Below, one piece after another: positions 83 to 29,701 of a stretch of 29,701 nucleotides of DNA; within the stretch, counting starts at the first letter, position 1, and every line of letters begins with the position of its first letter. The stretch is from the NCBI GenBank assembly GCA_002269645.1, contig NIVC01004977.1:1-29701 (forward strand), given 5' to 3'. Source of the DNA: Macrostomum lignano (lineage: Eukaryota). Position numbers and translations under genes: made by a program. Under the pieces are notes generated by a model. The model had not been told where the DNA came from. It was given only the letters and a program-made list of their open reading frames with translations, and ran no database searches.

Positions 83-426
83 AGTGTATTTTTATACAGG
101 AAAATATAATTCTCACAATACTCGCTCATAATGCAACAGATAGAAAGAATCGTTTGAATGACACCTGCATATCTCATCAATTCATGGCACACTTCATCCT
201 AGCGCCCTTATTCACTTAGACAGCGAGATAATATTGCATTTTTTATGGTTCTCCCTTGTCAACAAGAGCTTTCCATGCCTGCAGCAGCCACTCAGTGCTT
301 CCGTCAAGAGGCATGACGGCCTATCTTATGTAGCTTTCTTTTGTGAGGAACTGCGATATATGACTAGTGCTGTGAGAGCTGCTTCTGGTTGGGTTGCACT
401 TAATGACCCGGAACTGATGATGATCC

Positions 427-784
<358 letters not shown>

Positions 785-800
785 CTATTTGACCATTTTA

Positions 801-1159
801 GATCTTCAATCCCAAGCAGGTTCCAGTCGCTCCGCTCACTCAGCTGAGAACCTGCTGGCGTCACCTCAAGGTGGCAAGCCCGGCAGCTCAGCGACAATGA
901 AGAAGGCCCAACAGCAGTCGCAACATCCAAGCTCATTTCGCTACCAGAATCCACTGAATTCAGCGGGCATGGCCTATCAGACAGACACCTATAGTGTACA
1001 TCACCTGCCATCCGCAGTAACAATCAGCCACCGCCTTACATTGCCTCCAAGCATCCTCAATACACTGAACTGCTCGCCACCCTGGCAACTGGCCAGCAAC
1101 AGCCTGTCGGTACAGCAAACTTGGCGCGCCTTCCTTATGATCACATCAGCGACGTGTGA
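801..1159 (+). CDS. Possible terminal exon(s) of an upstream plus-strand gene; low-complexity tail ending ...QPPPY...YDHISDV*
   Basis: Acceptor-like ccattttag| at 800, then an open S/Q-rich frame. A second frame, open from 995 after cctatag|, encodes a PPPY motif and stops at 1157-1159. The junction between the two frames is unresolved. Confidence 0.3.
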
Positions 1160-1270
1160 ATTTTCTTGAATACTTTACTGAAACTTGAAGACAGGTTAAT
1201 TAACGATAACTGATTTGCTGCGACTATGAGGAACTATCCACATTTTTTGCTTCAGACCACCTTAAATACA

Positions 1271-1560
1271 GCCTACAATCCATTGGAGCGCCCTGATTGG
1301 CTGAGACCGCAGTCCCCCACACCAATCAATACTTTCCTACCCCAGCCCTAGCTGATACTAGAGTACAGAGGCTCCATTCGGCTAAAACCCCTCAGAGCTC
1401 CCTGATTGGCTGAGACTGCAGTCCTCCAAACCCAATCAATAATTTTCTACTCCAGCCCTAGCTGATACTAGAGTACAGTGGCTTCATTCGCCTACAACCC
1501 TCAGAGCTCCCTGATTGGCTGAAACTGCAGTCCACCAACCCCAATTCTTTCCTACCCCAG
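1271..1560. repeat. ~109-bp tandem repeat, about 2.6 copies
   Basis: ccctgattggctga recurs at 1291, 1400 and 1509, with conserved intervening sequence. Confidence 0.9.
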
Positions 1561-2466
1561 TTATTCTAGCAGTATAGAGCTTTCTCATCAGTCTCTCTGT
1601 GTGTGCATAGCTAATTAGTACATAGTTGGACGGTGTAAGGTCGTTCTGTCGTCACTGTACTTCTTGATCACTATATACCGACATTAAAACCACAGTAAAA
1701 TAAAAAACTGTAATAGCGCCAATATAGTTAATCGACATAACCATAACGACCAGCTTTTAATGTTGTTCTGCTAAAATTCGATGTAATTAACTCGAATGTT
1801 TGATATTAATTTCTAGTGTCATAAAGTGTCTTTTAAGCATCTAAAAATCTTTTAGCAACATCGAGACAGAGCAGAGCCAGAGCAGAGCATAAATTAATTT
1901 TCCTAATTAGCATATCCACTGAGGCAGATGCGGAAAAAATTTCAATCAGTTTTGAAATTAGCAAGTCAAATTTGTTTAGCCGACTTTCTCTGTCTCTGAA
2001 CTGACATCTGAGTCCGAGCAGTTTTTCTTGACAGCAAATTTATTGAAGGAAAACCAGCGCAAGGATTTCAGCTGAAACTTTAAGTCCCTGGGGGATTCAA
2101 ATTCCAGGAATATTTTGAGTGCTGTTAGCTGATGCAGATTCTGAATTAAAAACCTTGCTCAACTAAGAATCAAGATTTTTGCGGTTTTATTCAGTATTCG
2201 AATTTTGCTACTGTTCATCAGTAGTGTTTGTAGTGCTGGGTTTACTGATTGTTAAGATTGGGGTTGTGGAATATATAAAGATTCGCAGAAAATTGGGATA
2301 CATGATGGGCAAATATCTAAGTGATAGATAAATATTTAGTGGAGATACTTCTGAGAAAAATAGAGACTCAACAAAGACCTTAGAGATGTATGGAGATTCA
2401 AAACAAAAGCCTCAAAGAATTTTAGAGATTCGGGAGAAAAATCTAAAAGATAGCTAGATATATATT

Positions 2467-3120
2467 CGAGACAAAGACCTCAGAGAAAAATAAATATTCA
2501 GGACAAGGTCCTCAGAGGCAGATATAGATTCAGGACAAAGACCTCAGAGGCAGATATAGATTCAGGACAAAGACCTCAGAGGCAGATATAGATTCAGGAC
2601 AAAGACCTCAGAGGAAGATATAGATTCAGGACAAAGACCTCAGAGGCAGATATAGATTCAGGACAAAGACCTCAGAGAAAAATAAATATTCAGGACAAGG
2701 TCCTCAGAGGAAGATATAGATTCAGGACAAAGACCTCAGAGAAAGATATAGATTCAGGACAAAGACCTCAGAGAAAGATATAGATTCAGGACAAAGACCT
2801 CAGAGAAGGATATAGATTCAGAACAAAGACCTCAGAGAAAGCTAGACATTCGGAACAAAGTCCTCAGAGAAGGATATAGATTCACGACAAAGACCTCAGA
2901 GAAAGATATAGATTCAGAACAAAGACCTCAGAGAAAGATATAGATTCAGAACAAAGACCTCAGAGAAAGATATAGATTCAGAACAAAGACCTCAGAGAAA
3001 GCTATATATTTAGGAAAAACATCAACGAATTTTAGATATTCAGGACAACAATCTGAAAGAGAGATAAATTCATGACACAGACCTCAGAGATGGATGTAGA
3101 TTCTGAACAAAGACCAGAAA
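2467..3120. repeat. 32-bp minisatellite, about 20 copies
   Basis: Unit gatatagattcaggacaaagacctcagaggca in head-to-tail array, degenerate at both edges, with no spacers. Confidence 0.93.
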
Positions 3121-3152: not shown

Positions 3153-5429
<2,277 letters not shown>

Positions 5430-6329: not shown

Positions 6330-7573
6330 GGACAGACAGACAATCCAACAGACAGACAGACCATCTAACAGACAGACAGACCATCTAACAGACAGACAGA
6401 CCATCTAACAGACAGACAGACCATCTAACAGACAGACAGACCATCTAACAGACAGACAGACCATCTAACAGACAGACAGACAGACCATCTAACAGACAGA
6501 CAGACAATCTAACAGACAGACAATCTAACAGACAGACAATCTAACAGACAGACAGACAATCTAACAGACAGACAGACAATCTAACAGACAGACAGACAAT
6601 CTAACAGACAGACAGACAATCTAACAGACAGACAATCTAACAGACAGACAGACAGACAATCTAACAGACAGACAGACAATCTAACAGACAGACAGACAGA
6701 CCATCTAACAGACAGACAGACAATCTAACAGACAGACAATCTAACAGACAGACAGACAATCTAACAGACAGACAATCTAACAGACAGACAATCTAACAGA
6801 CAGACAGACAATCTAACAGACAGACAGACAATCTAACAGACAGACAGACAATCTAACAGACAGACAGACAATCTAACAGACAGACAATCTAACAGACAGA
6901 CAGACAGACAATCTAACAGACAGACAGACAATCTAACAGACAGACAGACAGACCATCTAACAGACAGACAGACAATCTAACAGACAGACAATCTAACAGA
7001 CAGACAGACAATCTAACAGACAGACAGACAGAAAATCTAACAGACAGACAGACAGACCATCAAACAGACAGACAGACCATCTAACAGACAGACAGACAAT
7101 CTAACAGACAGACAGACAATCTAACAGACAGACAGACAATCTAACAGACAGACAGACCATCTAACAGACAGACAGACAATCTAACAGACAGACAATCTAA
7201 CAGACAGACAGACAGACAATCTAACAGACAGACAGACAATCTAACAGACAGACAGACAGACCATCTAACAGACAGACAGACAATCTAACAGACAGACAAT
7301 CTAACAGACAGACAGACAATCTAACAGACAGACAGACAGAAAATCTAACAGACAGACAGACAGACCATCAAACAGACAGACAGACCATCTAACAGACAGA
7401 CAGATAATCTAACAGACAGACAAACAATCTAACAGACAGACAGATAATCTAACAGACAGACAGACCAGCTAACAGACAGACAGACAATCTACCAGACAGA
7501 CAGACAATCTACCAGACAGACAGACAATCTACCAGACAGACAGACAATCTACCAGACAGACAGACAATCTAAC
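6330..7573. repeat. Compound (ACAG)n + ATCTA/CATCTA satellite
   Basis: About 1.25 kb of 16-24 bp units such as ctaacagacagacagacaat, with variable ACAG number. Confidence 0.95.
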
Positions 7574-7713
7574 AAATATAAAATCGTTCCCAACATCGTC
7601 CTTTTGTCATCGCTTCTTCTCTTTCTAAACTCTAAATTGCCATGGTCAAACTTCAGAAAGTCTGCATCCCGTCGCACGACAGTCCCCAGGCCCTACAAAG
7701 CTGCTGTCCCGCA

Positions 7714-10700: not shown

Positions 10701-13002
10701 TTGATTCCATGTGTCATTGGTTCTATGTGTCATTGGTTCCATGGGTCACTAATTCCATTGGATCATTGGTTCCATGGATCATTGGTTCCATGGGTTATTG
10801 GTTCTATGGGTCATTCGTTCCATGGGTGACATTAGTTCCATGGGTCATTTGCCATTTTTTCTTAAAACCTCTTCAAGACGGTGAATTTATTTGTCACTCT
10901 CCGTTTCAGTCGGATGGGTCGAAACCGGGCCATAGACACTTTCTTTCTGCTCAGACCCTGCATTCCCATTCCAGTCGGAAAGACCACAGAGTAAAAGATT
11001 TTATGCATAGATGTATGCCTGTGTCCTCTGTGAGTTTGGAACTTTCTGTCACAGACAGAAGTGTTTTATATTAATCCGCAACATCTCGAGGCATGGCTTC
11101 GAGAAGACCTCCACCCAGGCAGGCTTTACTGGCTTGGCTGCAAAACGCAGACTCGGTCTTGATTCCGACACCGACGAGTCTGAAATCAACGACAGCGCTG
11201 ACTCGGACTCCGAGGATGAGGCCAATTTGGAGCAAGAAGAAGGCGAAATTGTGGAACAACAGGAAGCCTGAAACATTGTGTGGGAGCACGACGACGAACG
11301 ACCGGATCAATGTCCCGAATTTCTGGGAACAACTGGCTGCAATCCATCCTGGAATCTGCCGGATCAAGCCAACTATTCGGTTTGTTGTTGGTTTGCATCG
11401 CCATCTATTCGTCTTTTATGGGCGGCGTAGATCGCCTGGACAGTGGACTCCAGTCGTACCATCCGAACAGGAAGACGCAGAAATGGTTTCAGAAGCTCGG
11501 TTTTCACATCATCCTCCTTCTGGTTCGCAATGCTTGGATCGTTTACCAGAATGCTGGAGGAACAAAGAGTTTCCTCTGCTACCTAGAAGTTGCGATCAGG
11601 GATTCAATAGAACAGTCTGGGCCAGGCAGACGTTGCGTTTCGGTTCGGGTCGGTCGGGCACCCGCCGCAGCCGGGCACATTCCAAGCAAGTCAGGCCAGG
11701 TTGCTGGGCAAAATCGACCGAGGCGTCGATGCCGACAGTGTCAAAAGAAGACAGTGTACGTCTGCTCGCAGTGTCCTGGCGTCCCGTCCCTGTGTCTTGT
11801 GAACTGCTTTGGCACGTGGCACATTTTAAGAACCATTGTCATTTTATCAAGTGTTGGCAAGCTCTAAATGTTTTTGAAATTTGAATGGAACTTTCCCGCT
11901 ATGTTTGCTGGTTTGTTACTGTTGTTACTGTTAGTACGAGCCATCTTTGCAAAGCTTGTTTGCTTCACTTCTATTATTGGTCGAGTTCGACCCATAGCCG
12001 ACTGGAACGGTGGGTAGAGAATTTGTGCGCTGTCCATAGATATTTTGAACCGACTGCGCTGGGGAGTTGTAAGTGGTCGAAAACGACCTTCCCGACTTCT
12101 TAAGGTACTAATTGATCATTCTAAAAATAGATTTTTATCTAACTCAAGCCAAAATCATAGATCTTACATTCCCTAGATAAGCCACTCACGACCATAAGCA
12201 CACCCATAGAGCCTTCGTCTTTCTTGAAGATTTTGCGAACACGGTATCAGGTCAGTAGCTTGTGCGCGTATTAAGGGTTTTTCTAAGGATACTTAGATGG
12301 CAGGCGCAAGCCATACTTGCAGTCCGTGTAGCCCTTGTTTCGGAAAAAAGGCTATGCCTGAATCCGATGACTGAAAGGAATTCGACTTCAGGGTCGCTTA
12401 TCGCTTCAATCCACTTCTGTGCAGCAGAGTCACTCCTAGGGAAGTTGTGCAGCGACATGTTGACTCCATTACTTTTTGGTGGTGGCAATTTATGTATGCT
12501 GCAGCCCCGAACACAGCAGCCTCGAATTCAGCGCTCTTCCACTCATCTGTTTGATAGCAAAGCGCAAGTCGCGAGGACCAGTGAACTTTGTGTCTGTTGC
12601 GAATATTCTTGTAACCACGAAAGAAATATGTCTATGTCCCTTTAAGCTACTGACCTCAGACTTGTCTTAAACGCTGTCGGCTTAATTAAATTTTTCTTGC
12701 AATTCGCGTGGTCGGTCTTTTCCTATTGAATGCACTGAGAGTGGCCTATCTAGGGGATATAAGATCTATGGCAACAATAACATCAATATTGGTCTCCGTA
12801 CCCATCCTGATCAGTTTCCAGCGACTCAATTTTCAGTGTCACTTCCAGCTTCTCTGCCAGCTTGTTGTCAGCGGCTGGCGCCTCCTTGATCCGGACTGCG
12901 CTGGATTTGGTGGGCTTTGAGCTGCAGAATTCGGCGATGATTCATATTTTATTTATTATTACCAAATGGCCCAAAACCTACGGTAAATGAAAAAACAGAC
13001 AC

Positions 13003-13135: not shown

Positions 13136-14773
13136 TAGACAGACAGACAGACAGACACATGTAAAGTCAATCTCCAAGACGCTCTCACCGAGTCCCCGCG
13201 CCCCCGGTTCTCTGCGGCAGCTTCCTCGCTGGTTTCTGCTGCCCCGGCACCTTCAATGTAGCCGCAGGCGCAACTTCTCGATGCTGCGAGGCTACACTGG
13301 ACCGTCGCGAGTTCGAATCCCCGGCCTGTTGCAGCTTTCTAGCTTCCAGTTCGCTATGATGCGGCCCAGGTTCTAGCCGGTACATCTTCTTGGTCAGAGT
13401 TGCCGGTGATGTCTCCGGCTCCGACCTGGTGGACTCTGACATCAGGGTGTCGATTTCCAGACCTCCAGTGGCGATCTGCTTGGAGTCTCGCCGGAGTCGC
13501 TGATGCTGGTCCATTGTGGGGGCCACGAATGCGCTCTGCGACCTCCTCAGTGGTGGGACGGGTGGCGGCGGCTGCGGAGCTGCCTGAGCTGCTGTTGAAG
13601 TGTCTGTTGCATGATGCATGAGAAAGAAAGGGAGAAGTAGACAGGAATAAATGGAGAAGTAGACTGGAACAAGGGGAGAAGTAGACTGGAACAAGGGGAG
13701 AAGTAGACTGGAACAAGGGGAGAAGTAGACAGGAACAAGGGGAGAAGTAGACTGGAACAAGCGGAGAAGTAGACAGGAACAAGGAAAGAAGTAGACTGGA
13801 ACAAGGGGAGAAGTAGACAGGAACAAGGGGAGAAGTAGACTGGAACAAGGGGAGAAGTAGACTGGAACAAGGGGGGAAGTAGACTGGAACAATTGGGGAG
13901 AAGTAGACTGGAACAAGGGGAAAAGTAGACAGGAACAAAGGGAGAAGTAGACAGGAACAAGGGGAGAAGTAGACTGGAACAATTGTGGAGAAGTAGACTG
14001 GAACAATTGGGGAAAAGTAGACAGGAACAAGAGAGAAGTAGACAGGAACAGAAAATCAATAGACTAGAAATTGAAGTGTGAAGAACATTCCAATCAAAAT
14101 AGGCGCATAAAAGGGATACTATAAGTCTATTCCAACGTAGTTAAGCTTACTTGTAACACATTTTACTGAACTTGTTGTTGTCTGAACCTTTCTAGGTGCT
14201 TGTTTTTCACGTTGCTGCGGTAGCTGCTGCTGCTGAGGCCTGTTCTCAGAGTCAGTCAGTTGCTCATCCTTGGTCTGTTGTGGCACCTGAGGCTTTTCTG
14301 TTTCTGGTGGTATTGCAGTTGAAGATGAGACATCCTTGACCGGCTGCCGTTTGACGACACTCGGCTTCGAAACGGTTCGTTTCTTTCTTCTCACAGGTCG
14401 ATGCTGCTTCGAGTTGGACTTGCTGGCAGCGCCTGACTTGGCCAGCCTCCTCTGCTGCTGCTGCTCGATTTCGTCCTCAAGCGAGTCTCTTTCCTCATCA
14501 TCATCTTCGTTTGCGCTGCTGTCTTGACGACTGTCAGCTTCAAGGACGTCGCCCTGGGTCTCTGCTGGCTCAGCTGACATCCTGACCAAATCTGTGAGTC
14601 TGGTGCGTTGCTGTCGCAGTCTGTCGGCGGAAATGACTGATTTCTCTCCACCACAACTGCTATAAGAATGATTTTTGCGCTGCCTCGGATGCGCTCACAG
14701 CCAGGCTCCCTGGGTCGCGTCAAGTCATACCTTCATCCCCGACCCGACCCTCAAGAGAAAATTGGAGAGGAAA
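7714..14773 (-). CDS. Uncharacterised multi-exon protein (>=770 aa, 5' end not resolved), low-complexity with a short ordered core
   Basis: Phase-compatible GT-AG exons 14773-14731 (tentative), 14591-14151, 13603-13189, 12921-12802, 9769-9430, 9350-9259, 8666-8586 and 8494-7714 total 2313 nt and read as one open frame ending RSKRQN*. Core: [42 protein letters not shown]. The family was not recognised. Confidence 0.75.
8690..9200. repeat. 23-bp minisatellite (gggtcattgggtcttttggttat) in intron 9258-8667
   Basis: Tandem units with deletion variants; it produces the WVIGSFGY ORFs. Confidence 0.92.
9820..10850. repeat. ~16-bp minisatellite (cattggttccatgggt) with higher-order variants, intronic
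   Basis: About 1 kb array mixing cattggttccatgggt, cactaattccattggat and cattggttctatgtgt units. Confidence 0.92.
10897..12014 (+). mobile_element. Non-autonomous piggyBac derivative (internally deleted transposase)
   Basis: Acidic N-terminus from ATG 11093 (frameshift and stop) fused to C-terminal piggyBac motifs [18 protein letters not shown] and NAWIVY, plus the Cys-rich RRCRQC..YVCSQC..LC..CF..WH. Degenerate inverted repeats at 10897-10926 and 11983-12014. No intact TTAA TSD. Confidence 0.85.
12156..12770 (-). mobile_element. Non-autonomous P-element-like DNA transposon carrying a THAP-domain remnant
   Basis: 32-bp TIRs (12156-12187 and 12739-12770, 29/32 match) with CATAG...CTATG termini. 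Flanking 8-mers gccaaaat / gcaacaat match 6/8. Internal peptide CCVRGC...[19 protein letters not shown] matches the THAP signature (C-x-V-x-C...FP...KW). Confidence 0.8.
12992..13157. repeat. (AGAC)n microsatellite, intronic
   Basis: About 40 units in intron 13188-12922. Confidence 0.95.
13625..14050. repeat. 22-bp minisatellite (gtagactggaacaaggggagaa), intronic
   Basis: About 19 copies within intron 14150-13604. Confidence 0.92.
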
Positions 14774-15117: not shown

Positions 15118-15482
<365 letters not shown>

Positions 15483-15918
15483 CACTCGAGACTCGGTAGA
15501 TTAAATGGAGCAGTCCTTTGAAGTGAAGCGCTCATAGATTCTATTTTGCAGAAGAGCGTAGAAGCACTGATAATTTGTGGCTGTAACAAAATTTTGGCTG
15601 CTTCTGGTGTAACGCGCCCAGAGCTTCAACTTTTATACACGTTCATGCATGTGTTTAAATCTGTGCACGCATCTGCGCTAGCTCGTAAAAGTAGATATAA
15701 GTTACAGCAGTGGAAGCCTCAGTCTTTTGGTAACACATCTGCCGTGTCTGCACACTTGTGCACTGCAGCACTTCACGGACTCCATCATGCTTAAGTCTTA
15801 CTCATCATTTCGTGAGATTCTATGATTCTGAGTCAGCTATAATTCACGAAACTGCCATTCTAATACTTGCATACTCAATGATACTTACATGCACAACAAC
15901 AACAACAACAACAACAAG

Positions 15919-17525
15919 ATCCTTGCTCGCACTCAAGATGCGCTCCAGAAGATCGAACAGTGGGCAGATCACCTGCGCATTGACCTTAATCCATCCAAGA
16001 CCGAGTGCTGCCTCTACACTGTCTACAGCCACTCGATCCCCTCCAAGAAAGAACTGAAGTTCCTCGGGGTGTGGATAGACCATGGCCTCCTTTTTGATAA
16101 GCACTCCAACGCAGTCAAAGAGAAGATGACACGCAGAACCGCCATCATCCGCGCGCTCGCCCATCGCGAATGGGGCTGGGACCGCGCCCTGCTCCTCCGG
16201 GTTTATCGAGCACTCGTCGAATCTGTGGTCTGGCACGCTGCTGCTGCCTGACTCCATGGCTGTCCAGTACCCGCCTCGACGACCTGGACCGCGCTCAAAG
16301 AGAATCCCTCAGAGCCATCACGGGATTGCCACGCTCGACACCGGTGGAAGCCATCTATATGGAAACCAACGTCAGCCCGATCAGCCTCGAAGCCCGCCGT
16401 AGGGCCCTGATGGCCTACGAGAAAGCAAACCGCCGACCGGCCGACGATCCGTTCCGGCAGATCTGTGACAGGCAACTCAACACCCGGCTAGCGGCCAACA
16501 AAGGGCTACGAGAGCAAGCCAGAGCCATCTGCAACGCTATGATCCCTCTCCCGCGTCTGCCTATACCTACGACCCGCAACCCCCATGGGACTCGCTGGTT
16601 GATTGCGGGGTGCAGATGTTCACCAAACTCCCCGAGCATGAAGGATCTGCGACCGAGGCAGTGCTCTCCGCGATTGAGCAGCGTTGTCCCGATGCAGCCC
16701 TCTACTTCACTGACGGTTCGGTCTCAGGAGGCACCACCAACGGGGGATCGGCCTGGATCCTCCTCCGCAAAGAAGACGGCATTATCATCCGCAGAGGGCA
16801 CGCGGCAGCAGGCCGATGGTGCAATTCCTACGAGGCCGAGCTAAATGCCATCACTCTCGCGCTCCAGGACATCATCGATTCCGCTCCCGCCTGCGCCGCC
16901 ATCCTCACGGACAGTCAAAGTGCCATTACCGCCATCCAAGCCGACCGGCCCACACTGAACGCGAGGCTCGAACTAGCGAAGGCCCTCCTCGTGACTGCGG
17001 CCCATAGGACCAAACTTACGCTGCTCTGGGTGCCCGGGCATTCGGGGGTGCACGGCAATGAACTCGTCGACACAGAAGCTAAAGTCGCAGCGACTCTCTG
17101 TCAAGGTCAGGTGCTCATCTCGCTCCCCCGCCTCCAAGGAGCGGATCTACCATCACCTTAGGTATCAGCCCGACCTGCCAGGACACCTGGAGGTATACCG
17201 CACCCCGGTGTCCCCAGGAACGGGCACTCGTCGGCAGCGGACGCTTATATCCCAAGTCAGATCCGGCCATTGTCCAGAATCATCCTACTATCGTCACCGA
17301 ACAGGCATCGCCGAAGGAGGGCCATGCCGGCTATGCAATCAACCGACTGAGCAGTTCCATATTCTCCATTGTCCTAAGCTCGAACCTACTAGACGCACCA
17401 TCGGCGTCACTAGCATTGGTGACCTTGCACGAGGAGAAGTAGTGGCGCAGCTCCTGGGGGCCATCGACTGGCGGCCCCTCTGAGCTCATCTCCGCAAACA
17501 ACAACAACAAAAACAACAACAACAA
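15919..17525 (+). mobile_element. 5'-truncated, frameshifted non-LTR retrotransposon (I/Nimb/Ingi-like): RT C-terminus, RNase H, Cys/His knuckle, (CAA)n tail
   Basis: LNPSKTE..KFLGVWID..WGW; ITGLPRSTPVEAIYMETNV; RNase H YFTDGS..EAEL..ILTDSQS..WVPGHSGVHGNELVD; CRLCNQPTEQFHILHCP. Stop at 17481-17483, then a CAA-rich tail. At least 3 frameshifts. Confidence 0.9.
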
Positions 17526-19131: not shown

Positions 19132-22100
19132 CTAGTCAGTAGCCTCACCAGCTTGGACTCTAGTGGCCTCACCAGCTTGTACTCCACCAGCCTCACCAGC
19201 TTGTACTCCAGTGGCCTCGCCAGCTTGGTCTCCAGAGGCCTCACCAGCTTGTACTCCAGTGGCCTCACTAGCTTGTATCCCAGTGGCCTCACCAGCTTGG
19301 ACTCCAGTGGCCTCACTAGCTTGTACTCCAGTGGCCTCGCCAGCTTGTACTCCAGTGGCCTCACTAGCTTGTACTCCAGTGGCCTCACTAACTTGTACTC
19401 CAGTGGCCTCGCCAGCTTGTACTCCAGTGGCCTCGCCAGCTTGTACTACAGTGGCCTCGCCAGCTTGTACTACAGTGGCCTCGCCAGCTTGTACTCCAGT
19501 GGCCTCACCAGCTTGTACTCCAGTGGCCTTGCCAGCTTGTACTCCAGTGGCCTCGCCAGCTTGTACTCTAGTGGCCTCGCCAGCTTGGTCTCCAGTAGCT
19601 TCACCAGCTTGTATTACAGTGGCCTCACTAGCTTGGACTCCAGCAGCCTCACCAGATTGTACTCCAGTAGCCTCACCAGCTCGAACTCCATTGGAGAAAA
19701 CGGCCCACGTCTCCTCAGCGAACTCCGCTGCCAGGTGCGCCACATCGTACGCCGTCTTTCGGCACACTCCGCCTCCCGACCAATCAGATTTGAGCTGCTG
19801 ATTGAGCTCTTTCACCAGGATCTCAGTCGAGTGCTTCTCGTTGTTAACCAGGTAGACCCAGCGGACAATCCAGCTGTCCTCACTTGATAGAATTCTGTGC
19901 TCACGACTCACCATGAAGTTGAATATGTCTCTGGTGTCTCTCGATTGGTGAAAGTTTTTACGAGTATCCTTATCAATTCGCTTTGATTCTTCTAGCAGGC
20001 ATTTTTGCACGTTTTCAAGCGTTACAGTATCGTTCTTGAGCAGCTTCATCAGCGACTCGAGCTCGAATGCCTTCCGCTCTGTCTCGGAACTAAGCTGGTT
20101 GAACTGCCTTTTATAGTCGCCTCCAAGCTGCTTCTTAAACTGGCCAAACGCGTGAGGATATGAGAACTCTCGACCCGATCCCTTAAGCCGAACTGCCAGC
20201 GACCGATCGAGGACTTCCTTCGCCTCTTTCAGCACCGAGACGATCATGTTGTTCATTTCTTGAACTTCTCTACCAGTCTCCTTCATCTGCAGCTTCGTCA
20301 TGAGAAATCGATTCGATCTCATGAGGTTTCCGCGATCGCCGGCGCCTTCAGCTGACCGAGTCGAGCCCGCTTTGCTCGTTAGCAGATTGAGCTCCAAGAA
20401 CTCAGCGATTCTGAGCTTTCCAGACTTCTTTAAATCGTCCAAATCCGATTCAGTTTCAATAAAGAAGCTGTTGGAATCATCTATAGTGAGTTCGATCTTG
20501 GTGCACAGCTCGTACAACTCTCGGCGGAAGAACAGCGGGTCTTTTCCAGCTTGAGCTGATGGTGACGCATCCGCCATCACCCTTTCGGCAGTTTTCTGTT
20601 CGGACTTTCGACGCTCGAGAATTTCGAGAATTTGAGGAGCCGCATCGCGACATCCGCACTCGAGGCACTCCTGAAAATGTTTTAGATCAGCCTCGGGATT
20701 CTCTAGAAGTGACTGAGCCAGCAGTTTGTTTTTACTTTCATGCTCATCTGGAAGCTTCCTAAAACAGTCTACTGCGGCATCGAAGTTTCTGTTCTTCATT
20801 AGAAAGCGACCAAGGTGCTCCAGAGCGAACTCATTACCTTCATCTCGTTCTAATGCGGTTCTGTAAAGCGATTCGATGTCCAGCTTCTTCCTAAATGTGC
20901 CAAACAGAGAAGCAAACCATGCCAAGTACTCTTCTCTGCCTTCTTTTAAACGAAAAAGATCCTCAAAGAAGGCCTGTTTCTTTGCGTAAAACACCATTTC
21001 TAAACTGGACTGGGCCTCTACAGCAGCGATGCACGACTCTATAGCTTCGTCCGTATCACCCTGCTTCATCAAATACAAAGCCTTGCTAAACAGAATAACT
21101 GCCACATCTTTGTTATACATTGAAAATATCTGACGAAGTTAGTCGAAGTGAGCTACAGATTTATCTTTGCCTAAACTTTCGCTCTGCAGTTCCAGAAGTT
21201 TCAGCTCGATCCAAAGATTACCAGGTGCAGCTGCGACTTCTTGGCCTTTTTTTAGCAGTTGCATTGCTTCATCTGTACTCCCGATTTCGCAGGCTGCACC
21301 CGCCATCTCCAAGTAAAATCCGGAGTCGCTTATTGAAAAGTCAGAACTTTTTACATCGTCCAGTAGAGCCTTTTTTTGCTGGTCAAAACTTTCTTTTGTT
21401 CGCCAATTCAGATGCCGAAATATTTTTGCGCACACAACGTACATGAATAACGAATGCTCTTTGAAGCTCTTCGGGCTTTGCAGAAACATGTTGGTAGCTT
21501 TTTCAACGAGCTGGCAACACAATTCGTGGTTTACATTGTGAAGAATTGCTTCTGCATAGTTGGCATAAAAAATGGAGGTTGTGAGATTCTTCTTCTCCCC
21601 AATCTCTCTGGCGGTGCGCCACAGCTCCAACAATTCACTGTCGGCCTGCTTTTTTGCCGTCTGCCTGTTGCACCGAGCCTTTAAAAATGCCTCACCATAA
21701 AGCCAATAAAAGTTTTCTGGTTGTATTTCTTTGGCCTTGGAAAAAGCCTCAACACCAATAGCATACTTTTTGGGTCCGAAACAGTCAAAAGTGACGCCTT
21801 TGACGCCGAAGACTTGAGCTCGTTTGTTAGAGTCATTCCACAGACTGCTGAGCTCGCGAAGTTCCTGTGCAAGTGAGTCCTCTTCACGCTTCTGGAACTT
21901 TTTACTTGTATTTCCGCGCATCTTTTTGAGGTGCAATATGTCAGCTCTGATAACATACTCGCTGGATACGTGCAGGTCAGTCTGATTGTCTGACTGAATT
22001 TGAGCATCAATGCGTCGCGCCTCATCCAGGAGTTCTTGCGCTCTGACGAAATCCACGCGCGTCTTTTGGGTATGTAGGTATGCCAGCGTAGTGAGGTAGG

Positions 22101-22233
22101 CGACCTTCTTGTGAGGCTCTCTTTTGATCTTTCGTTCTGTGGTCTTGATCACGTCTTCGATGTTGACTTTTGTACTTTCCTCGTCAGGACGCCAAGTAAA
22201 GTGACACTCCAGCTGGTCCAAGGACTCAACCAT
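19132..22233 (-). CDS. IFIT-like tetratricopeptide-repeat protein with C-terminal extension; single 1034-codon frame interrupted by one TAA (21139-21141)
   Basis: N-terminal SLDQLECHFTW is the IFIT CHFTW signature. FSKAKEIQPENFYWLYGEAFLKAR aligns without gaps to human IFIT1 FEKVLEVDPENPESSAGYAISAYR (recalled sequence). Further TPR-like helices follow. ORFs 21139..22233 and 19132..21120 are in the same frame (GAC TAA CTT CGT CAG ATA TTT TCA ATG). Confidence 0.8.
19135..19686 (-). repeat. 24-bp coding minisatellite, 23 copies, encoding VQAGEATG
   Basis: Unit gtacaagctggcgaggccactgga on the minus strand, with no indels; the ORF stops immediately after the last copy. Confidence 0.93.
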
Positions 22234-23799: not shown

Positions 23800-26700
23800 G
23801 ACGAGCGACCCCAGACACACCGGCACCGTGCCTGGATTTCGGCTCGCAGCTGCATCACCAAGGCCGACGAGCTGCGTCACCTGCTAGTGGCTACCAACCC
23901 GGCGCTACCGGCAAACGGTGTCGTAGTTCACAAGACCATCTCCAAGCCGGACGGAGATGGTTTCACGGCTATTCTAGGACTGTCGGATAGCTGGATGCTC
24001 CGCTATCCGGACATGTCCCTCATCTCTGTCGGGCTGATGCAGATTCAGCTCTTTAGCTTTGAGTCTGACGCCACCCGTCCACCGCCCCCGGAGAAGCGTA
24101 AGCGGGCGAGCGGGCACCGCCCGCGGAGAAGCGTAAGCGAGCGAGCGGGCACCGCCCGCGGAGAAGCGTAAGCGAGCGAGCGGGGGCTCTGCCGGGCGGA
24201 AACGCCCAGGAAAAGAAGCTCCCGGTCGTCACGACCCCTCCGAGGACGTGGACCCTGTCAGAGGGAAAGCCGCGAAAGCTGCAGCAACAGGCGGACGTGG
24301 AAAGGGCCGGAAACCCACCCGGAACACTATCCGCTCTGGTCTGACTCAGCGCGCGAAGCAGCTGCTGGACACCGCCAGGGCCCACAACCGCAGCAACCCC
24401 CAGCCCAATGTCACCACTGCCCCCCAGAAAACCGGGCTGAGAGCGAGAATGCCGCCCAGGTGGAGGCATCGCCCTCGACCATGGAGACCATCCGGAAGGA
24501 GCCCATGGAACTGGAGCCTGGAGCTATCGGCGAGGCAGAAGAGGTGGCTCTCCTGCACAACTCGCCCTGAGCCGGCAGGAAGCTGCGCGGACCACTCGTG
24601 GATTCCCCGGAGTGGACATCCTGCAGCTAAACCTACACCACTGCATCGCGGCCTCGACCAACCTGATGCGGGTGGCAAACTTTGCGAAACCGGGCATCAT
24701 CCTACTCCAGGAGCCCTGGACAAAGAAAGGTAAGATTCTGAATATTCCTGCTGGTTTTGACTGTTTTCAAGACCACCAAAACCCCAGAGCAGCCATGTTC
24801 GTGTCTACCCATCTCAAAGCTTGGCACAGACCGGACCTCTCTGACAGAGATCTCTGTGTGATTCAATTCAACCATATTATCACCAACCGCACGGTCATCA
24901 TCGCCTCGATCTATATCCCTGGCGATGGCCCCGCGGTTCCACCCAACCTCATCTCCCTCGTGGACTACTGCTCTAACTGTAGGTTCGAGCTGCTGGTGGC
25001 GGGCGACGTCAACGCTCACCACACCACTGGGGCAATAATACTTCCAACAGCAGAGGCGAGGAACTCCTTGCTTACATCTGCACCACCAATACTGAGTTTT
25101 GCAACATTGGTGGAACCCCCACCTTTGACAACGGGCGATGGACGGAGGCCCTCGACGTTACCCTCGTCTCCCATGGCTTGACTCCTTTAGTCAAGGACTG
25201 GGAGGTTTGGGACGAATAGGAATCTCTGTCTGACCATCGCTTCGTTCGTTTCCGATTGCAATCCTCTTGCCCCAAGCCTCACATCCTGTGGAAAAGGAAC
25301 GTCCGGAACACTGACTGGACGGCTTTCACGGAAACCCTGAAACGCCAGACAGATCAGCTGTTTACCGCCGCTCCAACCATCTGTCAGGAAGTGGATGACC
25401 TTGCAGACTTGCTCAGCAAGACCGTCCTGACAGCCCATGAGGCTTCCTGTCCTCTTAAAGCCTACAAAGGCACAATATCCGCCCCCTGTTTGCACCCGGC
25501 GCTTGGATCCCTCCGGCGCAAGGTAAAGCTTCCAACCGTAAGCTCGCAAGAGCAAGGACCCAGCTGACCTGGCCGCCTACCAAGAAGCGATCCGCGACTT
25601 TAAGCGTGAAACCAGGAAAGCCAAGTCCGACAAATGGCGCCAATACTGCGCGGAGTTAGAAGGCACCCGTCCTACTTCGCGCGTAGTTAAGGCTCTCACT
25701 CTTGACAAAATGTAAAAGCTCTCAGTTATTAAAAGACCGGACGGCCGGCTCGCTGAGAACCCTGGGGAATCGCTGGACATCATGCTCACCAGCTCTTTCC
25801 CACGTGCCGCACAGCAGCTAGGCCCACCGGACCACTCTCCGGGCGGACAGATCCTGGCTTCGACCATCATTACTAGAGAGAGGACGGCTCGCGCCGCAAA
25901 ATACTTCTCTCCTTTCAAGTCACCAGGATCTGACAACATTTATCCTGCCTTCCTCCATGAGGCAGTTATAAATGACAGGTTTCTCGGCCTCCTCTGCAAC
26001 CTCTTCAAGGCCAGCATTACCCTGGGTACGTGCCAAAAGCCTGGCAAGAGGCTACGGTAGTCTTCATACCCAAGCCAGGGAAGGGAGACTGATGGAACGG
26101 CTGGTGCTCTGGCGCCTTCTCCTCGTAGAGCTGAGGAACTCCCCGCTCTCCCTAACCAGCACGCCTTTCGTTCTGGACGCTCCATCGAAAGTGCGCTGCA
26201 CGCCATTGTCGACAAGCTGGAGCACGCCGTGCTTGGCAATGGATACGCGCTCTCGCTTTTCCTCGACATTGATGATGCTTTCAATAATGTGCTCTTTGAA
26301 GTCTTTAAGCGGGCCCTGGAATCCCGGGGCACGCACGAGCACCTCACTCGCTGGATCATGTACATGGTCTCCCATCGTACTGCCACCTCGCGCCTCCTGG
26401 GACACTCGCGCTCCGTGGAAGTCCAGAAAGGCGGACCGCAAGTCCTAAGCCCGAAGCCCGATCCTCTCCTAAGCCCGATCCTCTGGAATATAGTCATGGA
26501 CGAGCTGCTTTGCAGCCCGCATCCGGACCCAGTTTAGAAGGTCGGCTATGCGGATGATGTTACCGCCACTGTGGCTGGACCATCACCCGCGGTCCTCAGG
26601 GACTCCTTCAAGCCTTCATCCACCGTGCCGAACGCTGGGCACACAGCTGCGGTCTCAGGTTCTCTGAGTCTAAAACCGTGGCTATCATGTTCACCAGCCG

Positions 26701-27533
26701 CCGAAACTGGAGGATCGAACCGCTCTCCCTCTATGGCAAACCTGTTGCCATGGAGAAACAAACCAGATGTCTGGGCGTCACCCTCGACCACAGCTAAGCT
26801 GGACCCCGCACGTCCAAACCAAAGCCCGCAAAGCCTCGCGACTCTCGCGCAGATCCGCAGAGCTTTCGGCGCTACCTGGGGCCTCACCCCCGCCGCCTCT
26901 GGTGGATTTACACTGCCATTGTTAGACCGGCCATCTCCTTCGCCGGCTTCATTTGGAACAGTGCCTAGTGAAAGGGGTTCTTTAGGTTCTAAATAGGGTG
27001 CAAGGCCGCGCTTGTCGAGCTATCATGAGCGCGGCTCCCTCTGCGCCCTTCGCTGGCATGAACTCCTTCTTGGACATTCCCCCTCGACCTACCTCTTTGT
27101 TGGGTGTCCAAATCCAGAAGCAGTTTGCCTTCAGAAAGCGGAATTTCCGGCCGCATGGCGACCTCAGCCTGCGAGACCTGGAAGAAGCGAGAGGCATTCC
27201 ACCACGTCATGAAGCAAGAGACAACTGGAAACCCCATGAAATCCACTGCTTCACTGACGGGTCCCAAATCAACTCCGCCTCTGGCTACGGCTACTGCATC
27301 GTGTCTGGAGGGAGAACTATGGCGACCTTCTCCCAACACACCGGCACCTGCTCCACCGTCTTCCAGAACGAAGTTCTCGCCATTAGCTCCTGCGCCATGG
27401 AGCTGTACAATCAGCGCGTCTGGGGAAGGAAATTACCCTCCAATCAGACAGCCAAGCGGCGATTCACGCCCTTGAGCGCAGCACCACCTGCTCGCGTACA
27501 GTCCTCGACTGTATCGGGCAGCTCAACCGCTTA
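23800..27533 (+). mobile_element. Decayed LOA/R1-group non-LTR retrotransposon: ORF1 remnant, then APE endonuclease, RT and RNase H; 3' end missing
   Basis: APE: ILQLNLHHC, LLQEPW, GDVNAHH. RT: PGSDNIYP, VFIPKPG, HAFRSGRS, FLDIDDAF, LSPILWNIVMDELL, GYADDV (26547). RNase H: CFTDGS..VFQNEVLAI. ORF1 has a DUF4780-like stretch (tentative). Many frameshifts and stops. The 5' boundary is approximate. Confidence 0.9.
24082..24185 (+). repeat. 35-bp triplication inside LOA ORF1
   Basis: ccgcccgcggagaagcgtaagcgagcgagcgggca x3. Confidence 0.9.
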
Positions 27534-27940
27534 GGCACAACATATCTTTTGATATTTGTGCCTTTCTTATTGTTCTATCGATATTCATAAAGCTTTTTGT
27601 TCAGAAAATTAGGATTCCATGTTAATTTTTTATTCTACGTATATTTGTGCACGTCTAGTGCCTAAAAACCATTAAAATGGCACAGCTTGGCTCTTTGATT
27701 TTATGAGTCTATTTCATCATTCTTAGCTGACTGTGTAACAAATATGCGTAGCAAAAATGATAAAATGGATTCATAAACCAAAGATTTGGAGCTGTACAAT
27801 GCATTATTATTTTTTTAGGTACAGGAAACGTACGTAAAATAAAAATTAAATTTGAATCCTAATTTTTGAACGAAAGTTTACAAATATCGATAGAGCAATA
27901 AGAAGGCACAACATATCAAAAGATGAGCTTGGATCTGCCT
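27534..27940. mobile_element. AT-rich foldback element / MITE (~400 bp imperfect palindrome)
   Basis: 27547-27630 is the reverse complement of ~27840-27925, and weaker symmetry continues to a centre near 27735. GGCA...TGCC ends. No clear TSD. Confidence 0.75.
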
Positions 27941-29475: not shown

Positions 29476-29701
29476 CATATAGAATCTAATTTCACATGGA
29501 CGCTTCACTTCAAAGGACTGCCTCCATTTAATCTGCCGAGTCTGAATGCCACTTTCTATGGCAACCAGAGAAGTCGAGCACAAAAACCAACATCGACCAG
29601 GTGATTGAACGATTGCTGGAGTACAGGCTGTCAGACTCTGAGATGTCAGTTGTCTACCTGACCACCCTTAGCTACCTATCAACTCTGCCACCGTTTCCGA
29701 A
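29476..29701 (+). CDS. N-terminus of a second IFIT-like paralog, cut by the window end and apparently disrupted upstream of the CHFxW motif
   Basis: From 29544: ECHFLWQPEKSSTKTNIDQVIERLLEYRLSDSEMSVVYLTTLSYLST, versus ECHFTWRPDEESTKVNIEDVIKTTERKIKREPHKKVAYLTTLAYLHT in the first gene. In-frame TAA at 29529; an adjacent frame (29476-29544) reads ...FNLPSL. Confidence 0.75.

What the first reader, a model, noticed from the sequence alone, without database searches (positions are those of the whole stretch)
19132..22233. Invertebrate IFIT-like protein fused to a large C-terminal effector-like region: candidate RNA-sensing immune system
Seen: an intronless 1034-codon frame starting SLDQLECHFTW, followed by TPR-like helices, a ~200-aa non-TPR domain and an 8-aa repeat tail. 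Established: CHFTW is the N-terminal signature of vertebrate IFIT1/2/3/5, interferon-induced TPR proteins of ~470-490 aa that bind the 5' ends of viral RNA and carry no fused effector. By manual alignment to recalled IFIT1, the R187-equivalent Arg and the Y157-equivalent Tyr appear kept, while W147/K151 appear changed (V/C), suggesting altered RNA-end specificity. The acceptor just upstream of the ATG parallels the two-exon layout of vertebrate IFITs. Inference: an IFIT scaffold about twice the usual size in a probable flatworm may be an interferon-independent sensor coupled to an effector.
Basis: partly seen in the sequence, partly recalled or inferred. Interest (0 to 1): 0.9.

Follow-up and report, generated by a model that had tools for sequence, protein, structure and literature searches.

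The report
Flatworm IFIT-like gene, interrupted copy
This is a stop-codon-interrupted copy of a Macrostomum lignano (flatworm) gene whose first half is a true relative of the vertebrate antiviral IFIT proteins and whose second half ends in a conserved domain that matches nothing known; its function has not been tested.

Summary
The frame is on the minus strand at 22233..19132, but it is not open. Codon 365 is TAA (21141..21139), which splits it into ORFs of 364 and 662 aa. The window is collinear at 97-98% with the M. lignano locus of BOX15_Mlig031348g1. That sister copy has TCA (Ser) at codon 365 and one intronless 921-aa ORF.

IFIT homology is real. A family profile hits IFIT5, IFIT1, IFIT2 and IFIT3 collinearly from the LxCHFTW motif (E 7e-24 to 2e-7). 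An AlphaFold model (pLDDT 92) has IFIT5 and IFIT1 as its best Foldseek matches, ahead of generic TPR proteins.

The RNA 5'-end pocket is only half kept. R187, Y157, T31, D27, K270 and R273 are retained. The equivalents of K150, R253, Y254 and Q288 are C, V, V and E.

The C-terminal ~300 aa are all-helical. They end in a conserved ~95-aa domain (RREH..W..W..N..KH..YDVAH.AAEFAE) with no Pfam, PDB or viral-fold match.

In M. lignano paralogs this domain is combined with RRM, CCCH zinc-finger or RGG modules, which points to RNA. Related full-length genes occur, partly in tandem, in unidentified ENA assemblies.

Verdict: a new variant of a known kind. The immune and effector roles are unproven, and this copy is probably dead or mis-called.

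The parts
21142..22233 (-). ORF1, codons 1-364. IFIT-homologous N-terminal TPR region: LxCHFTW cap at residues 8-14, and equivalents of IFIT subdomains I, II and pivot.
   Evidence: ORF. (IFIT5/1/2/3 sequence matches, collinear from the N-terminus). (model pLDDT 91.9; best Foldseek hits are IFIT5 and IFIT1).
21139..21141 (-). In-frame TAA at codon 365. The sister copy has TCA (Ser), and the 50% paralog also has Ser.
20599..21138 (-). Codons 366-545. Continuation of the TPR solenoid, with canonical TPRs at about 379-412 and 455-495. ORF2's first ATG is at 21120.
   Evidence: TPR_1/2/8 hits; consensus-TPR matches; 29 helices up to residue 544.
19969..20598 (-). Codons 546-755. Helical, non-TPR middle region with family motifs LFFS..YE.CA.I and YPHA. 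It holds the weak DUF1722 match.
   Evidence: family alignment; model; DUF1722 in only 3 of 21 members.
19684..19968 (-). Codons 756-850. Conserved ~95-aa C-terminal four-helix domain. E778, W788, W792, E837 and E840 are invariant. R777, N797, H801, Y829 and H833 are nearly invariant.
   Evidence: conservation. (no match to PDB sequences, Pfam, PDB folds, BFVD or PADLOC).
19132..19683 (-). Codons 851-1033 plus stop. About 23 copies of an 8-aa repeat (AGEATGVQ), variable in number (about 9 in the sister copy). The paralog has an RGG-type repeat here instead.
   Evidence: TRF; comparison with P0001 and P0002.
29496..29701 (+). Start of a neighbouring, divergently oriented family paralog (MDASLQRTAPFNLPSLECHFLWQPE...), which runs off the window. 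It has a +1 and a -1 indel relative to the sister locus, creating an in-frame TAA.
15479..15535 (-). Remnant of a duplicated N-terminal fragment of that paralog (MSASLQRTAPFNLPSLEC), cut off by the (TAGA)n microsatellite.

Best explanation
Shown: the window holds an allele or recent duplicate of the Macrostomum lignano gene BOX15_Mlig031348g1. The intact gene is an intronless ORF of roughly 920-1030 aa with five parts.
1. An IFIT-homologous TPR clamp (about residues 1-480) with the same LxCHFTW N-terminal cap, helix order and fold as IFIT5/IFIT1.
2. Extra TPR helices up to about residue 545.
3. A helical linker region of about 210 aa.
4. A conserved ~95-aa four-helix domain (RREH..W..W..N..KH..YDVAH.AAEFAE) that is not in Pfam or the PDB.
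5. A variable 8-aa repeat tail.

In the window copy a single C-to-A change makes codon 365 TAA. As sequenced, this copy can encode only the first 364 aa. It is a recent nonsense allele or young pseudogene, or else a base-call error.

The gene belongs to a multi-copy, locally clustered family. In M. lignano, members of the family also combine the IFIT-like region or the C-terminal domain with RRM, CCCH zinc-finger or RGG modules.

Inferred: the intact protein is an RNA- or RNP-binding factor. The IFIT-like groove, lined by the retained R187, Y157, K270, R273, T31 and D27, holds single-stranded RNA. It does so without the canonical triphosphate pocket, because the equivalents of K150, R253, Y254 and Q288 are lost. 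The C-terminal domain has a cluster of invariant Glu/His/Trp/Asn residues on three helices. It provides the output: a catalytic or metal-binding site, or a partner-docking surface. An antiviral role is plausible by analogy with IFITs and from the family's fast, clustered evolution, but nothing here tests it.
For: Identity and the stop codon:
- 97% and 50% M. lignano homologs at 100% coverage.
- the whole window is collinear with the P0001 locus at 97-98%, apart from transposon indels.
- TAA versus TCA at codon 365; 43 differences in 2570 nt.
- derived amino-acid changes split 7 to 7 between the two copies, so the stop is recent.
- the gene is intronless in both the sister copy and the paralog.

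IFIT homology:
- the 3-sequence profile hits IFIT5 at E 3.7e-5, positions 5-184 against 13-183.
- the 19-sequence family profile hits IFIT5 at 7e-24 (7-395 against 13-404), IFIT1 at 5.5e-19, IFIT2 at 4.7e-10 and IFIT3 at 1.7e-7, each as one collinear stretch.
- library-wide hits include P0044 (E 2.4e-9) and P0062.
- NCBI names these IFIT5-like (Hypanus sabinus, a stingray) and IFIT1-like (Saccoglossus).
- BLASTP against IFIT5 gives E 2e-5; hhalign gives probability 96.7%.
- in the reverse search, IFIT5 matches family members from its N-terminus in one stretch, whereas generic TPR proteins match only through internal repeats.
- the model has pLDDT 91.9, and its top Foldseek hits are IFIT5 bound to PPP-RNA (E 2.9e-9) and IFIT1 (TM 0.58-0.60).

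Pocket residues: using the residue list in PMC9677429 Table 5.

C-terminal domain:
- conservation across more than 25 proteins.
- model pLDDT 79.6, pTM 0.82, all alpha-helical.

Link to RNA:
- RRM_1 in P0017 at E 5.5e-9.
- P0055 is named C3H1-type and P0028 RRM-containing; both are from M. lignano.
- RGG-type tails in P0002 and P0034.

Clustering: searches show a tandem pair in an ENA contig, a neighbouring paralog, and a fragment in the window and sister locus.
Against: - The window copy is interrupted. The neighbouring paralog's start in the same window is also broken, so this haplotype may be decaying or poorly base-called.
- Half of the residues whose mutation strongly reduces IFIT5 RNA binding are not conserved: K150 to C, R253 to V, Y254 to V, Q288 to E. 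Q288E and K150M are themselves loss-of-binding mutations in IFIT5.
- I could not inspect model coordinates, so whether a basic channel exists is untested.
- The C-terminal region has no detectable relative of known function, so 'effector' is a guess.
- There are no expression data, and no ISRE-like motif within 7 kb of the gene.
- dN/dS between the two copies is near 1 (28 nonsynonymous against 11 synonymous codons). That fits relaxed constraint as well as it fits an arms race.
Confidence: 0.6

Rival explanations
1. The TAA is an assembly or base-call error, or a rare somatic or heterozygous variant. In the animal this copy is an intact gene of about 1033 aa, like its sister.
For: It is a single-base difference, TAA against TCA. 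There is no excess of derived changes in the window copy (7 against 7). No other frame disruption occurs over 1033 codons. The same window shows two 1-nt indels in the neighbouring paralog's start that look like long-read errors.
Against: Substitution errors are less typical of long-read consensus than indels (own knowledge). The flanks differ from the sister locus by real structural variants, namely transposon presence or absence and repeat number, so this is a distinct haplotype or copy that may carry real mutations. No reads are available to check.
Confidence: 0.3
2. The protein is an ordinary TPR scaffold. The CHFTW motif is a chance resemblance and there is no specific relation to IFITs.
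For: Pfam sees only weak generic TPR hits. ORF1 alone hits IFIT1 at only E 0.57. Designed consensus-TPR proteins score as high as IFITs against the family profile. Liu et al. 2013 rejected invertebrate IFIT candidates on phylogenetic grounds (PMC3688568).
Against: IFIT matches are single collinear alignments of about 390 residues that start at the N-terminal motif, whereas generic TPR proteins match only by repeated local hits. IFIT5 and IFIT1 are the top structural matches. R187 (the R186 equivalent) is nearly invariant across the family. Proteins that NCBI names IFIT-like, from a stingray and an acorn worm, are significant hits of the flatworm profile in a library of 1.8 billion proteins.
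Confidence: 0.05
3. The window copy is expressed despite the stop. This could happen through a 27-nt GT..AG mini-intron (gtagctcacttcgactaacttcgtcag) that removes the TAA in frame, through stop-codon read-through, or as two separate proteins (a 364-aa IFIT-like protein and a 662-aa C-terminal protein).
For: The 27 nt around the stop begin with GT, end with AG, contain CTAAC and are a multiple of 3. ORF2 has an ATG six codons after the stop. Short N-only and C-only family members exist elsewhere.
Against: The same 27 nt are coding in the sister copy and align without a gap in the paralog, with F363, R367 and F370 invariant. 27 nt is far below usual metazoan intron sizes (own knowledge). No transcript data are available. 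Many of the short 'members' are ORF calls made by prokaryote-style gene callers on eukaryotic contigs.
Confidence: 0.07
4. The intact protein is an IFIT homolog by descent but works in housekeeping RNP biology (for example germline or neoblast RNA granules, or translation control) or as a protein-protein scaffold. It is not in antiviral defence, and the C-terminal domain is a structural or oligomerisation module.
For: The canonical 5'-ppp/cap pocket is not conserved. Partner modules in the paralogs (RRM, CCCH, RGG) are typical of general RNP proteins. No IFN system or ISRE is evident. Human IFITs also act through protein-protein contacts, as in the IFIT1-IFIT3 complex 6c6k listed.
Against: The family's lineage-specific expansion, local clustering, copy-number and repeat variation, frequent broken copies, and dN/dS near 1 between recent copies resemble fast-evolving defence families more than housekeeping genes. 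This is circumstantial only.
Confidence: 0.3

Closest known systems
Human IFIT5 and IFIT1 (PDB 4HOT, 3ZGQ, 5W5H, 5UDI, 6C6K)
   Same: The N-terminal L-x-C-H-F-T-W cap is the same. The sequence match is collinear over about 390 residues (E 7e-24 and 5.5e-19 with the family profile). They are the best structural matches of the predicted fold. The equivalents of E33, T37, Y156, R186, K257 and R260 are retained. The genes sit in local clusters of paralogs.
   Different: The flatworm protein is twice the length. It has about 65 extra TPR residues, a helical C-terminal extension of about 300 aa with a novel conserved domain, and a repeat tail. The equivalents of K150, Y250, R253, Y254, H287, Q288, R294 and R307 are replaced (C, F, V, V, L, E, C, L). 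Pairwise identity is about 15-26%. There is no interferon system or ISRE, and the CDS is a single exon.
Invertebrate 'IFIT1-like' proteins, for example Saccoglossus kowalevskii XP_006812281.1 (P0062) and Strigamia-type UniRef T1JLK3 (P0042)
   Same: They are significant hits of the flatworm profile. They share the N-terminal motif (SHFHW / CHFTW) and the conserved Arg equivalent to R186. Like the flatworm protein, they lack the K150 equivalent.
   Different: They are 400-560 aa TPR-only proteins without the C-terminal domain. Identity to the flatworm protein is about 18%. Liu et al. 2013 (PMC3688568) did not accept the acorn-worm candidates as IFIT family members on phylogenetic grounds.
M. 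lignano paralogs: BOX15_Mlig030191g2 (P0002), Mlig010163 (P0024), Mlig019237 (P0034), the RRM-fused A0A1I8FW97 (P0017) and the C3H1-fused A0A1I8GYW7 (P0055)
   Same: They share the same C-terminal domain, and most also share the IFIT-like region.
   Different: They have other tails (RGG-type repeats) or extra RNA-binding modules (RRM, CCCH zinc finger). Identity ranges from 23 to 50%.
Pfam DUF1722 (the UniRef name for P0001 is 'DUF1722 domain-containing protein')
   Same: There is a 28.6-bit match over residues 649-734, above the gathering score.
   Different: The match is found in only 3 of 21 family members, all of them close M. lignano copies. It lies in a poorly conserved, insertion-prone helical stretch and is absent from the 50% paralog. 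It is most likely a compositional false positive, so the database name is misleading.

Membership tests
[quoted passage not shown] | N-terminal L-x-C-H-F-T-W motif at the start of the first helix pair | tested here: met
   LECHFTW at residues 8-14. It aligns to IFIT5 C18-W22 with maximal posterior probability and is conserved across the family.
IFIT | Collinear sequence homology to IFIT1/2/3/5 over subdomains I, II and pivot, stronger than to generic TPR proteins | tested here: met
   The matches are single stretches of about 390 aa starting at the N-terminus, at E 7e-24 (IFIT5). Natural generic TPR proteins match only locally or repeatedly.
IFIT | IFIT-type fold (a non-canonical TPR clamp of three subdomains plus a pivot) | tested here: met
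   The model has pLDDT 91.9. The top five Foldseek hits are IFIT5, and IFIT1 reaches TM 0.58-0.60. TM values are moderate, and the subdomain geometry was not inspected.
IFIT | Positively charged pocket that binds the RNA 5' end (IFIT5 K150, R186, Y250, R253, Y254, Q288; IFIT1 R38, K151, R187, R255) | tested here: inconclusive
   The equivalents of R186, Y156, K257, R260, T37 and E33 are kept. The equivalents of K150, Y250, R253, Y254, H287, Q288, R294 and R307 are lost (residue list). Electrostatics of the model could not be computed.
IFIT | TPR-only architecture of about 470-490 aa | tested here: not met
   The protein is 921-1062 aa, with about 300 aa of non-TPR C-terminal region plus a repeat tail.
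IFIT | Induction by interferon or virus through ISRE elements close to the promoter | tested here: not met
   GAAANNGAAA occurs only at 14295 and 14770, far from the gene, and at the chance rate. Inducibility itself cannot be tested here.
IFIT | Two-exon gene in which exon 1 carries the ATG and a few bases | tested here: not met
   The ATG lies within the long ORF. The public gene model is one CDS exon. The upstream AG is not conserved in the paralog. A non-coding first exon or a spliced leader remains possible.
IFIT | Monophyly with vertebrate IFITs in a phylogeny that includes other TPR families | not tested
   No tree was built. Identities of 15-26% and unidentified source organisms make a quick tree unreliable.
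HEPN-type RNase domain (considered for the C-terminal four-helix domain) | R-x(4-6)-H motif in an all-alpha four-helix domain | tested here: not met
   The conserved motifs are R-R-E-H, N-x-x-K-H and H-x-A-A-E-F-A-E. No R-x4-6-H is conserved, and there is no Foldseek or PADLOC hit.
DUF1722 (PF08349) | Match above the gathering score that is shared by the homologous family | tested here: not met
   Only 3 of 21 members match, and the 50% paralog does not.

The most novel reading that the evidence does not exclude
Flatworms, and at least one other unidentified invertebrate lineage, carry an expanded, clustered family of IFIT-derived RNA sensors that are covalently fused to a previously unknown helical output domain, possibly a metal-dependent enzyme. 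This would be an interferon-independent 'sensor plus effector in one chain' version of IFIT immunity. In paralogs the same output domain is re-used with RRM, CCCH and RGG RNA-binding modules.
Probability: 0.2. Interest if true: 0.8.

Novelty: new variant of a known kind. Interest (0 to 1): 0.55.

Why it matters
IFITs are textbook vertebrate, interferon-driven effectors. The one systematic survey I could read (Liu et al. 2013, PMC3688568) concluded that they arose with jawed vertebrates.

This work shows a flatworm family that is IFIT-like by sequence profile and by predicted fold. That pushes the scaffold's origin deep into Bilateria, alongside the acorn-worm and centipede-type hits. It also shows the scaffold fused to a conserved domain of unknown fold class.

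If the fusion proves to be a sensor-output pair, it would show how IFIT-type RNA recognition worked before interferon, and it would add a new protein domain to RNA biology.

On the practical side, the public names for these proteins ('hypothetical', 'DUF1722 domain-containing') are uninformative or misleading.

The specific window copy adds little, because it is interrupted by a stop codon.

Tried and rejected
1. DUF1722 as the identity of the C-terminal region. Rejected: it matches only 3 of 21 members and lies in a non-conserved stretch.
2. A 27-nt in-frame mini-intron or read-through across the TAA. Rejected as unlikely: the same bases are coding and conserved in the sister copy and the paralog.
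3. An ISRE/IRF motif upstream of the gene. None is present.
4. Conservation of the upstream 'acceptor' in the paralog. The region is not alignable, so there is no conclusion.
5. Word-indexed homolog searches with wide alignments. One was flooded by generic TPR proteins, the other returned only six short ENA proteins, so neither widened the taxonomic picture.
6. Foldseek of the C-terminal model against the PDB and BFVD, PDB sequence-profile search, and PADLOC. No significant match.
7. 'mafft --add' of IFIT5 to the family alignment. It gave a register shift of 2-3 residues around K150/R186. I discarded it in favour of hmmalign, which reproduces the hmmsearch alignment with high posterior probabilities.
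8. Identifying the organisms behind the ENA and Logan homologs (ERZ25074608, ERZ26859043, SRR21676453). There is no paper hit. GC content is 38-40% and there is no DNA similarity to M. lignano. They remain unidentified.
9. A literature search for invertebrate or flatworm IFITs. It found only Liu et al. 2013; the other hits were IFITM or reference-list mentions.
10. HEPN as the C-terminal domain. The defining motif is absent.
Full report
**Observation.** It is not open. Codon 365 is TAA (window 21141..21139). This gives ORF1 of 364 aa (MVESLDQLECHFTW...) and, six codons later in the same frame, ORF2 of 662 aa. The 8-aa repeat tail is a 24-nt tandem repeat at 19137-19694 with 23.2 copies and 87% matches. 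The window is eukaryotic and repeat-rich.

**Identity of the locus.** A protein search with the read-through sequence found only two proteins, both from the flatworm Macrostomum lignano.
- P0001 (BOX15_Mlig031348g1) is 921 aa and 97% identical at 100% coverage.
- P0002 (BOX15_Mlig030191g2) is 1062 aa and 50% identical at 100% coverage.

The P0001 locus (L001, NIVC01000347.1) holds a single uninterrupted 2766-nt ORF. In P0002, residues 1-1036 are also encoded without an intron.

The whole 29.7-kb window is collinear with L001 at 97-98% nucleotide identity, apart from transposon presence/absence and repeat-number differences. The window is therefore an allele or a very recent duplicate of that gene.

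At codon 365 the sister copy has TCA (Ser) where the window has TAA. Otherwise there are 43 substitutions in 2570 nt, affecting 28 nonsynonymous and 11 synonymous codons. Using P0002 as outgroup, derived amino-acid changes split 7 to 7 between the two copies, and Ser365 is ancestral. The stop is therefore recent, or it is a base-call error. A 27-nt GT..AG stretch spans the stop, but the same bases are coding and conserved in both homologs, so I do not think it is an intron.

**Is the N-terminal half an IFIT?** Pfam sees only weak generic TPRs, and ORF1 alone hits IFIT1 at only E 0.57. Profile-based evidence is much stronger:
- A profile of the three M. lignano sequences hits IFIT5 at E 3.7e-5 over positions 5-184 against 13-183.
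- An exhaustive HMMER search of 1.84 billion representative proteins found only 61 hits. Among them are P0044 (E 2.4e-9) and P0062, which NCBI names IFIT5-like (Hypanus sabinus, a stingray) and IFIT1-like (Saccoglossus kowalevskii).
- A 19-sequence family profile of residues 1-545 hits IFIT5 at E 7e-24 (7-395 against 13-404), IFIT1 at 5.5e-19, IFIT2 at 4.7e-10 and IFIT3 at 1.7e-7. Each is one collinear stretch. The other strong hits are designed consensus-TPR proteins that score by summing repeats, and local matches to OGT.
- BLASTP of P0001 against IFIT5 gives E 2e-5, with 26% identity over 172 aa.
- hhalign of the family against a rodent IFIT1B-like protein gives 96.7% probability.
- In the reverse direction, IFIT5 matches family members from its N-terminus in one stretch, whereas generic TPR proteins match only by internal repeats.
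- An AlphaFold2 model of P0001 residues 1-545 (pLDDT 91.9, pTM 0.83, 29 helices) has IFIT5 bound to PPP-RNA as its best PDB match (4hot_A, E 2.9e-9). The next four are also IFIT5. IFIT1 reaches TM 0.58-0.60. The first generic TPR protein (OGT) comes after them.

**RNA pocket.** I reconstructed IFIT5 residues 13-404 from the HMMER output. Its residues agree with the published numbering at all 17 positions checked. I mapped the residues tested by mutagenesis (Table 5 of PMC9677429) onto the family by hmmalign.

Retained (IFIT5 residue to flatworm residue):
- E33 to D27
- T37 to T31
- Y156 to Y157
- R186 to R187 (Arg in 17 of 18 family sequences)
- K257 to K270
- R260 to R273

Changed:
- Q41 to K35
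- W146 to V147
- K150 to C151 (Cys in most long family members)
- Y250 to F263
- R253 to V266
- Y254 to V267
- H287 to L308
- Q288 to E309
- R294 to C315
- R307 to L327

The pocket as a whole, however, is only half conserved, and K150M and Q288E are loss-of-binding changes in IFIT5. RNA 5'-end binding of the IFIT type is thus possible but not supported. I could not inspect model coordinates or electrostatics.

**C-terminal half.** Residues of about 495-850 were modelled with a 21-sequence alignment (pLDDT 79.6, pTM 0.82) and give 16 helices and no strands. The last ~95 residues form the most conserved block of the whole protein..F.ARREH.II..EAAWH..W....N..KH...LNEYR...TAYDVAH.AAEFAEQT. E778, W788, W792, E837 and E840 are invariant. 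R777, N797, H801, Y829 and H833 are nearly invariant.

There is no match in:
- PDB sequences
- Pfam as a family-wide hit (DUF1722 matches only three close paralogs)
- PDB folds (best E 0.49, TM below 0.3)
- BFVD viral folds
- PADLOC

There is also no conserved HEPN R-x4-6-H motif. The spacing of conserved His, Glu and Asn residues on three helices suggests a metal or catalytic site, but that is inference only.

**Family and context.** Full-length homologs carrying both the N-terminal and C-terminal parts (P0004, P0006, P0007, P0009, P0011) occur as intronless ORFs in ENA assemblies ERZ26859043 and ERZ25074608. These come from an organism or organisms with 38-40% GC and no DNA similarity to M. 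lignano. I could not identify the organisms.

Two family members lie in tandem 4 kb apart on one ENA contig.

Within M. lignano the C-terminal domain also occurs with other modules:
- an N-terminal RRM (P0017 and P0028)
- CCCH zinc fingers (P0055, named C3H1-type)
- RGG-type tails (P0034 and P0002)

These partners point to RNA or RNP biology.

The sister locus carries a second, divergently oriented family gene about 7 kb upstream, and a duplicated N-terminal fragment of it downstream. In the window, the start of that neighbour is at 29496-29701 (+). It has two 1-nt indels that create a stop. The fragment survives as a 19-codon remnant at 15535..15479 (-), cut off by a (TAGA)n microsatellite.

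**Interpretation.** The best-supported account is a nonsense-interrupted copy, real or an artefact, of a member of a fast-evolving, clustered flatworm family. The family consists of IFIT-homologous TPR proteins fused to a novel helical C-terminal domain.

The intact protein most likely binds RNA or RNPs through the IFIT-like groove, using a pocket different from that of IFIT1 and IFIT5, and acts through the C-terminal domain. An antiviral role is plausible by analogy and from the family's evolutionary style. It is untested: there is no ISRE, no expression data, and dN/dS near 1 is ambiguous.

**Literature.** In the literature I could search, IFITs are regarded as restricted to jawed vertebrates (PMC3688568). 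I found no description of flatworm IFITs or of this fusion. NCBI's automatic annotation already labels some invertebrate proteins 'IFIT-like'.

**Rating.** I rate this a new variant of a known kind, with interest 0.55.

Noticed in passing
window 29496-29701 (+): Start of a second IFIT-like family paralog (MDASLQRTAPFNLPSLECHFLWQPEKSSTK...). It is divergently oriented, about 7.3 kb upstream of the gene studied, and runs off the window end. Relative to the sister locus it has a +1 and a -1 indel that create an in-frame TAA. In L001 the full gene is at 2734..108 (-), split into two overlapping ORFs.
   Followed up: partly
window 15479-15535 (-); L001 18961-19656 (+): Duplicated N-terminal fragment of that neighbouring paralog. 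About 190 codons survive in the sister locus. In the window only 'MSASLQRTAPFNLPSLEC' remains, followed directly by the (TAGA)n microsatellite at 15118-15481.
   Followed up: partly
window 3153-3722 (-): ORF with a strong fibrinogen C-terminal globular domain (PF00147, E 1.4e-30). It is probably an exon of a fibrinogen-related protein, a class often used as immune lectins in invertebrates.
   Followed up: partly
window 15752-17507 and 24600-27600: Non-LTR retroelement pieces: RNase H at 16610-17161 (+), and a weak endonuclease/exonuclease/phosphatase match at 24612-25181 (+). The 15.7-17.5 kb element is absent from the sister locus. In turn, the sister locus has an insertion of about 4.5 kb encoding an integrase (rve) between its positions 13186 and 17750, which the window lacks.
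   Followed up: partly
window 21145-21171 (-): 27 nt around the premature stop read gtagctcacttcgactaacttcgtcag. The stretch has GT..AG ends, an internal CTAAC and a length divisible by 3, so it looks like a mini-intron. It is coding and conserved in the homologs.
   Followed up: yes
L004 10001-12610 and 16666-18762 (ENA ERZ25074608 contig ctg185430): Two family members in tandem on the same strand, 4 kb apart, in an unidentified low-GC organism. Further short family-like ORFs lie at 15299-15661 and 20252-20587, which suggests broken copies.
   Followed up: partly
P0017 / P0028, P0055 / P0045, P0034 (M. lignano proteins): The conserved C-terminal domain, the IFIT-like region, or both are combined with an RRM, CCCH (C3H1) zinc fingers or long RGG-type repeats in other M. 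lignano genes. This is domain shuffling around RNA-binding modules.
   Followed up: partly
window, many sites (for example 423-784, 2456-3115, 3810-4526, 6331-7574, 9837-10849, 13630-14050): Very dense micro- and minisatellites. Several of them create long spurious ORFs in several frames (SIYL, SSS and LVPW repeats).
   Followed up: no
P0001 (UniRef name): The public name 'DUF1722 domain-containing protein' rests on a match seen only in the closest paralogs. It is probably a false positive.
   Followed up: yes
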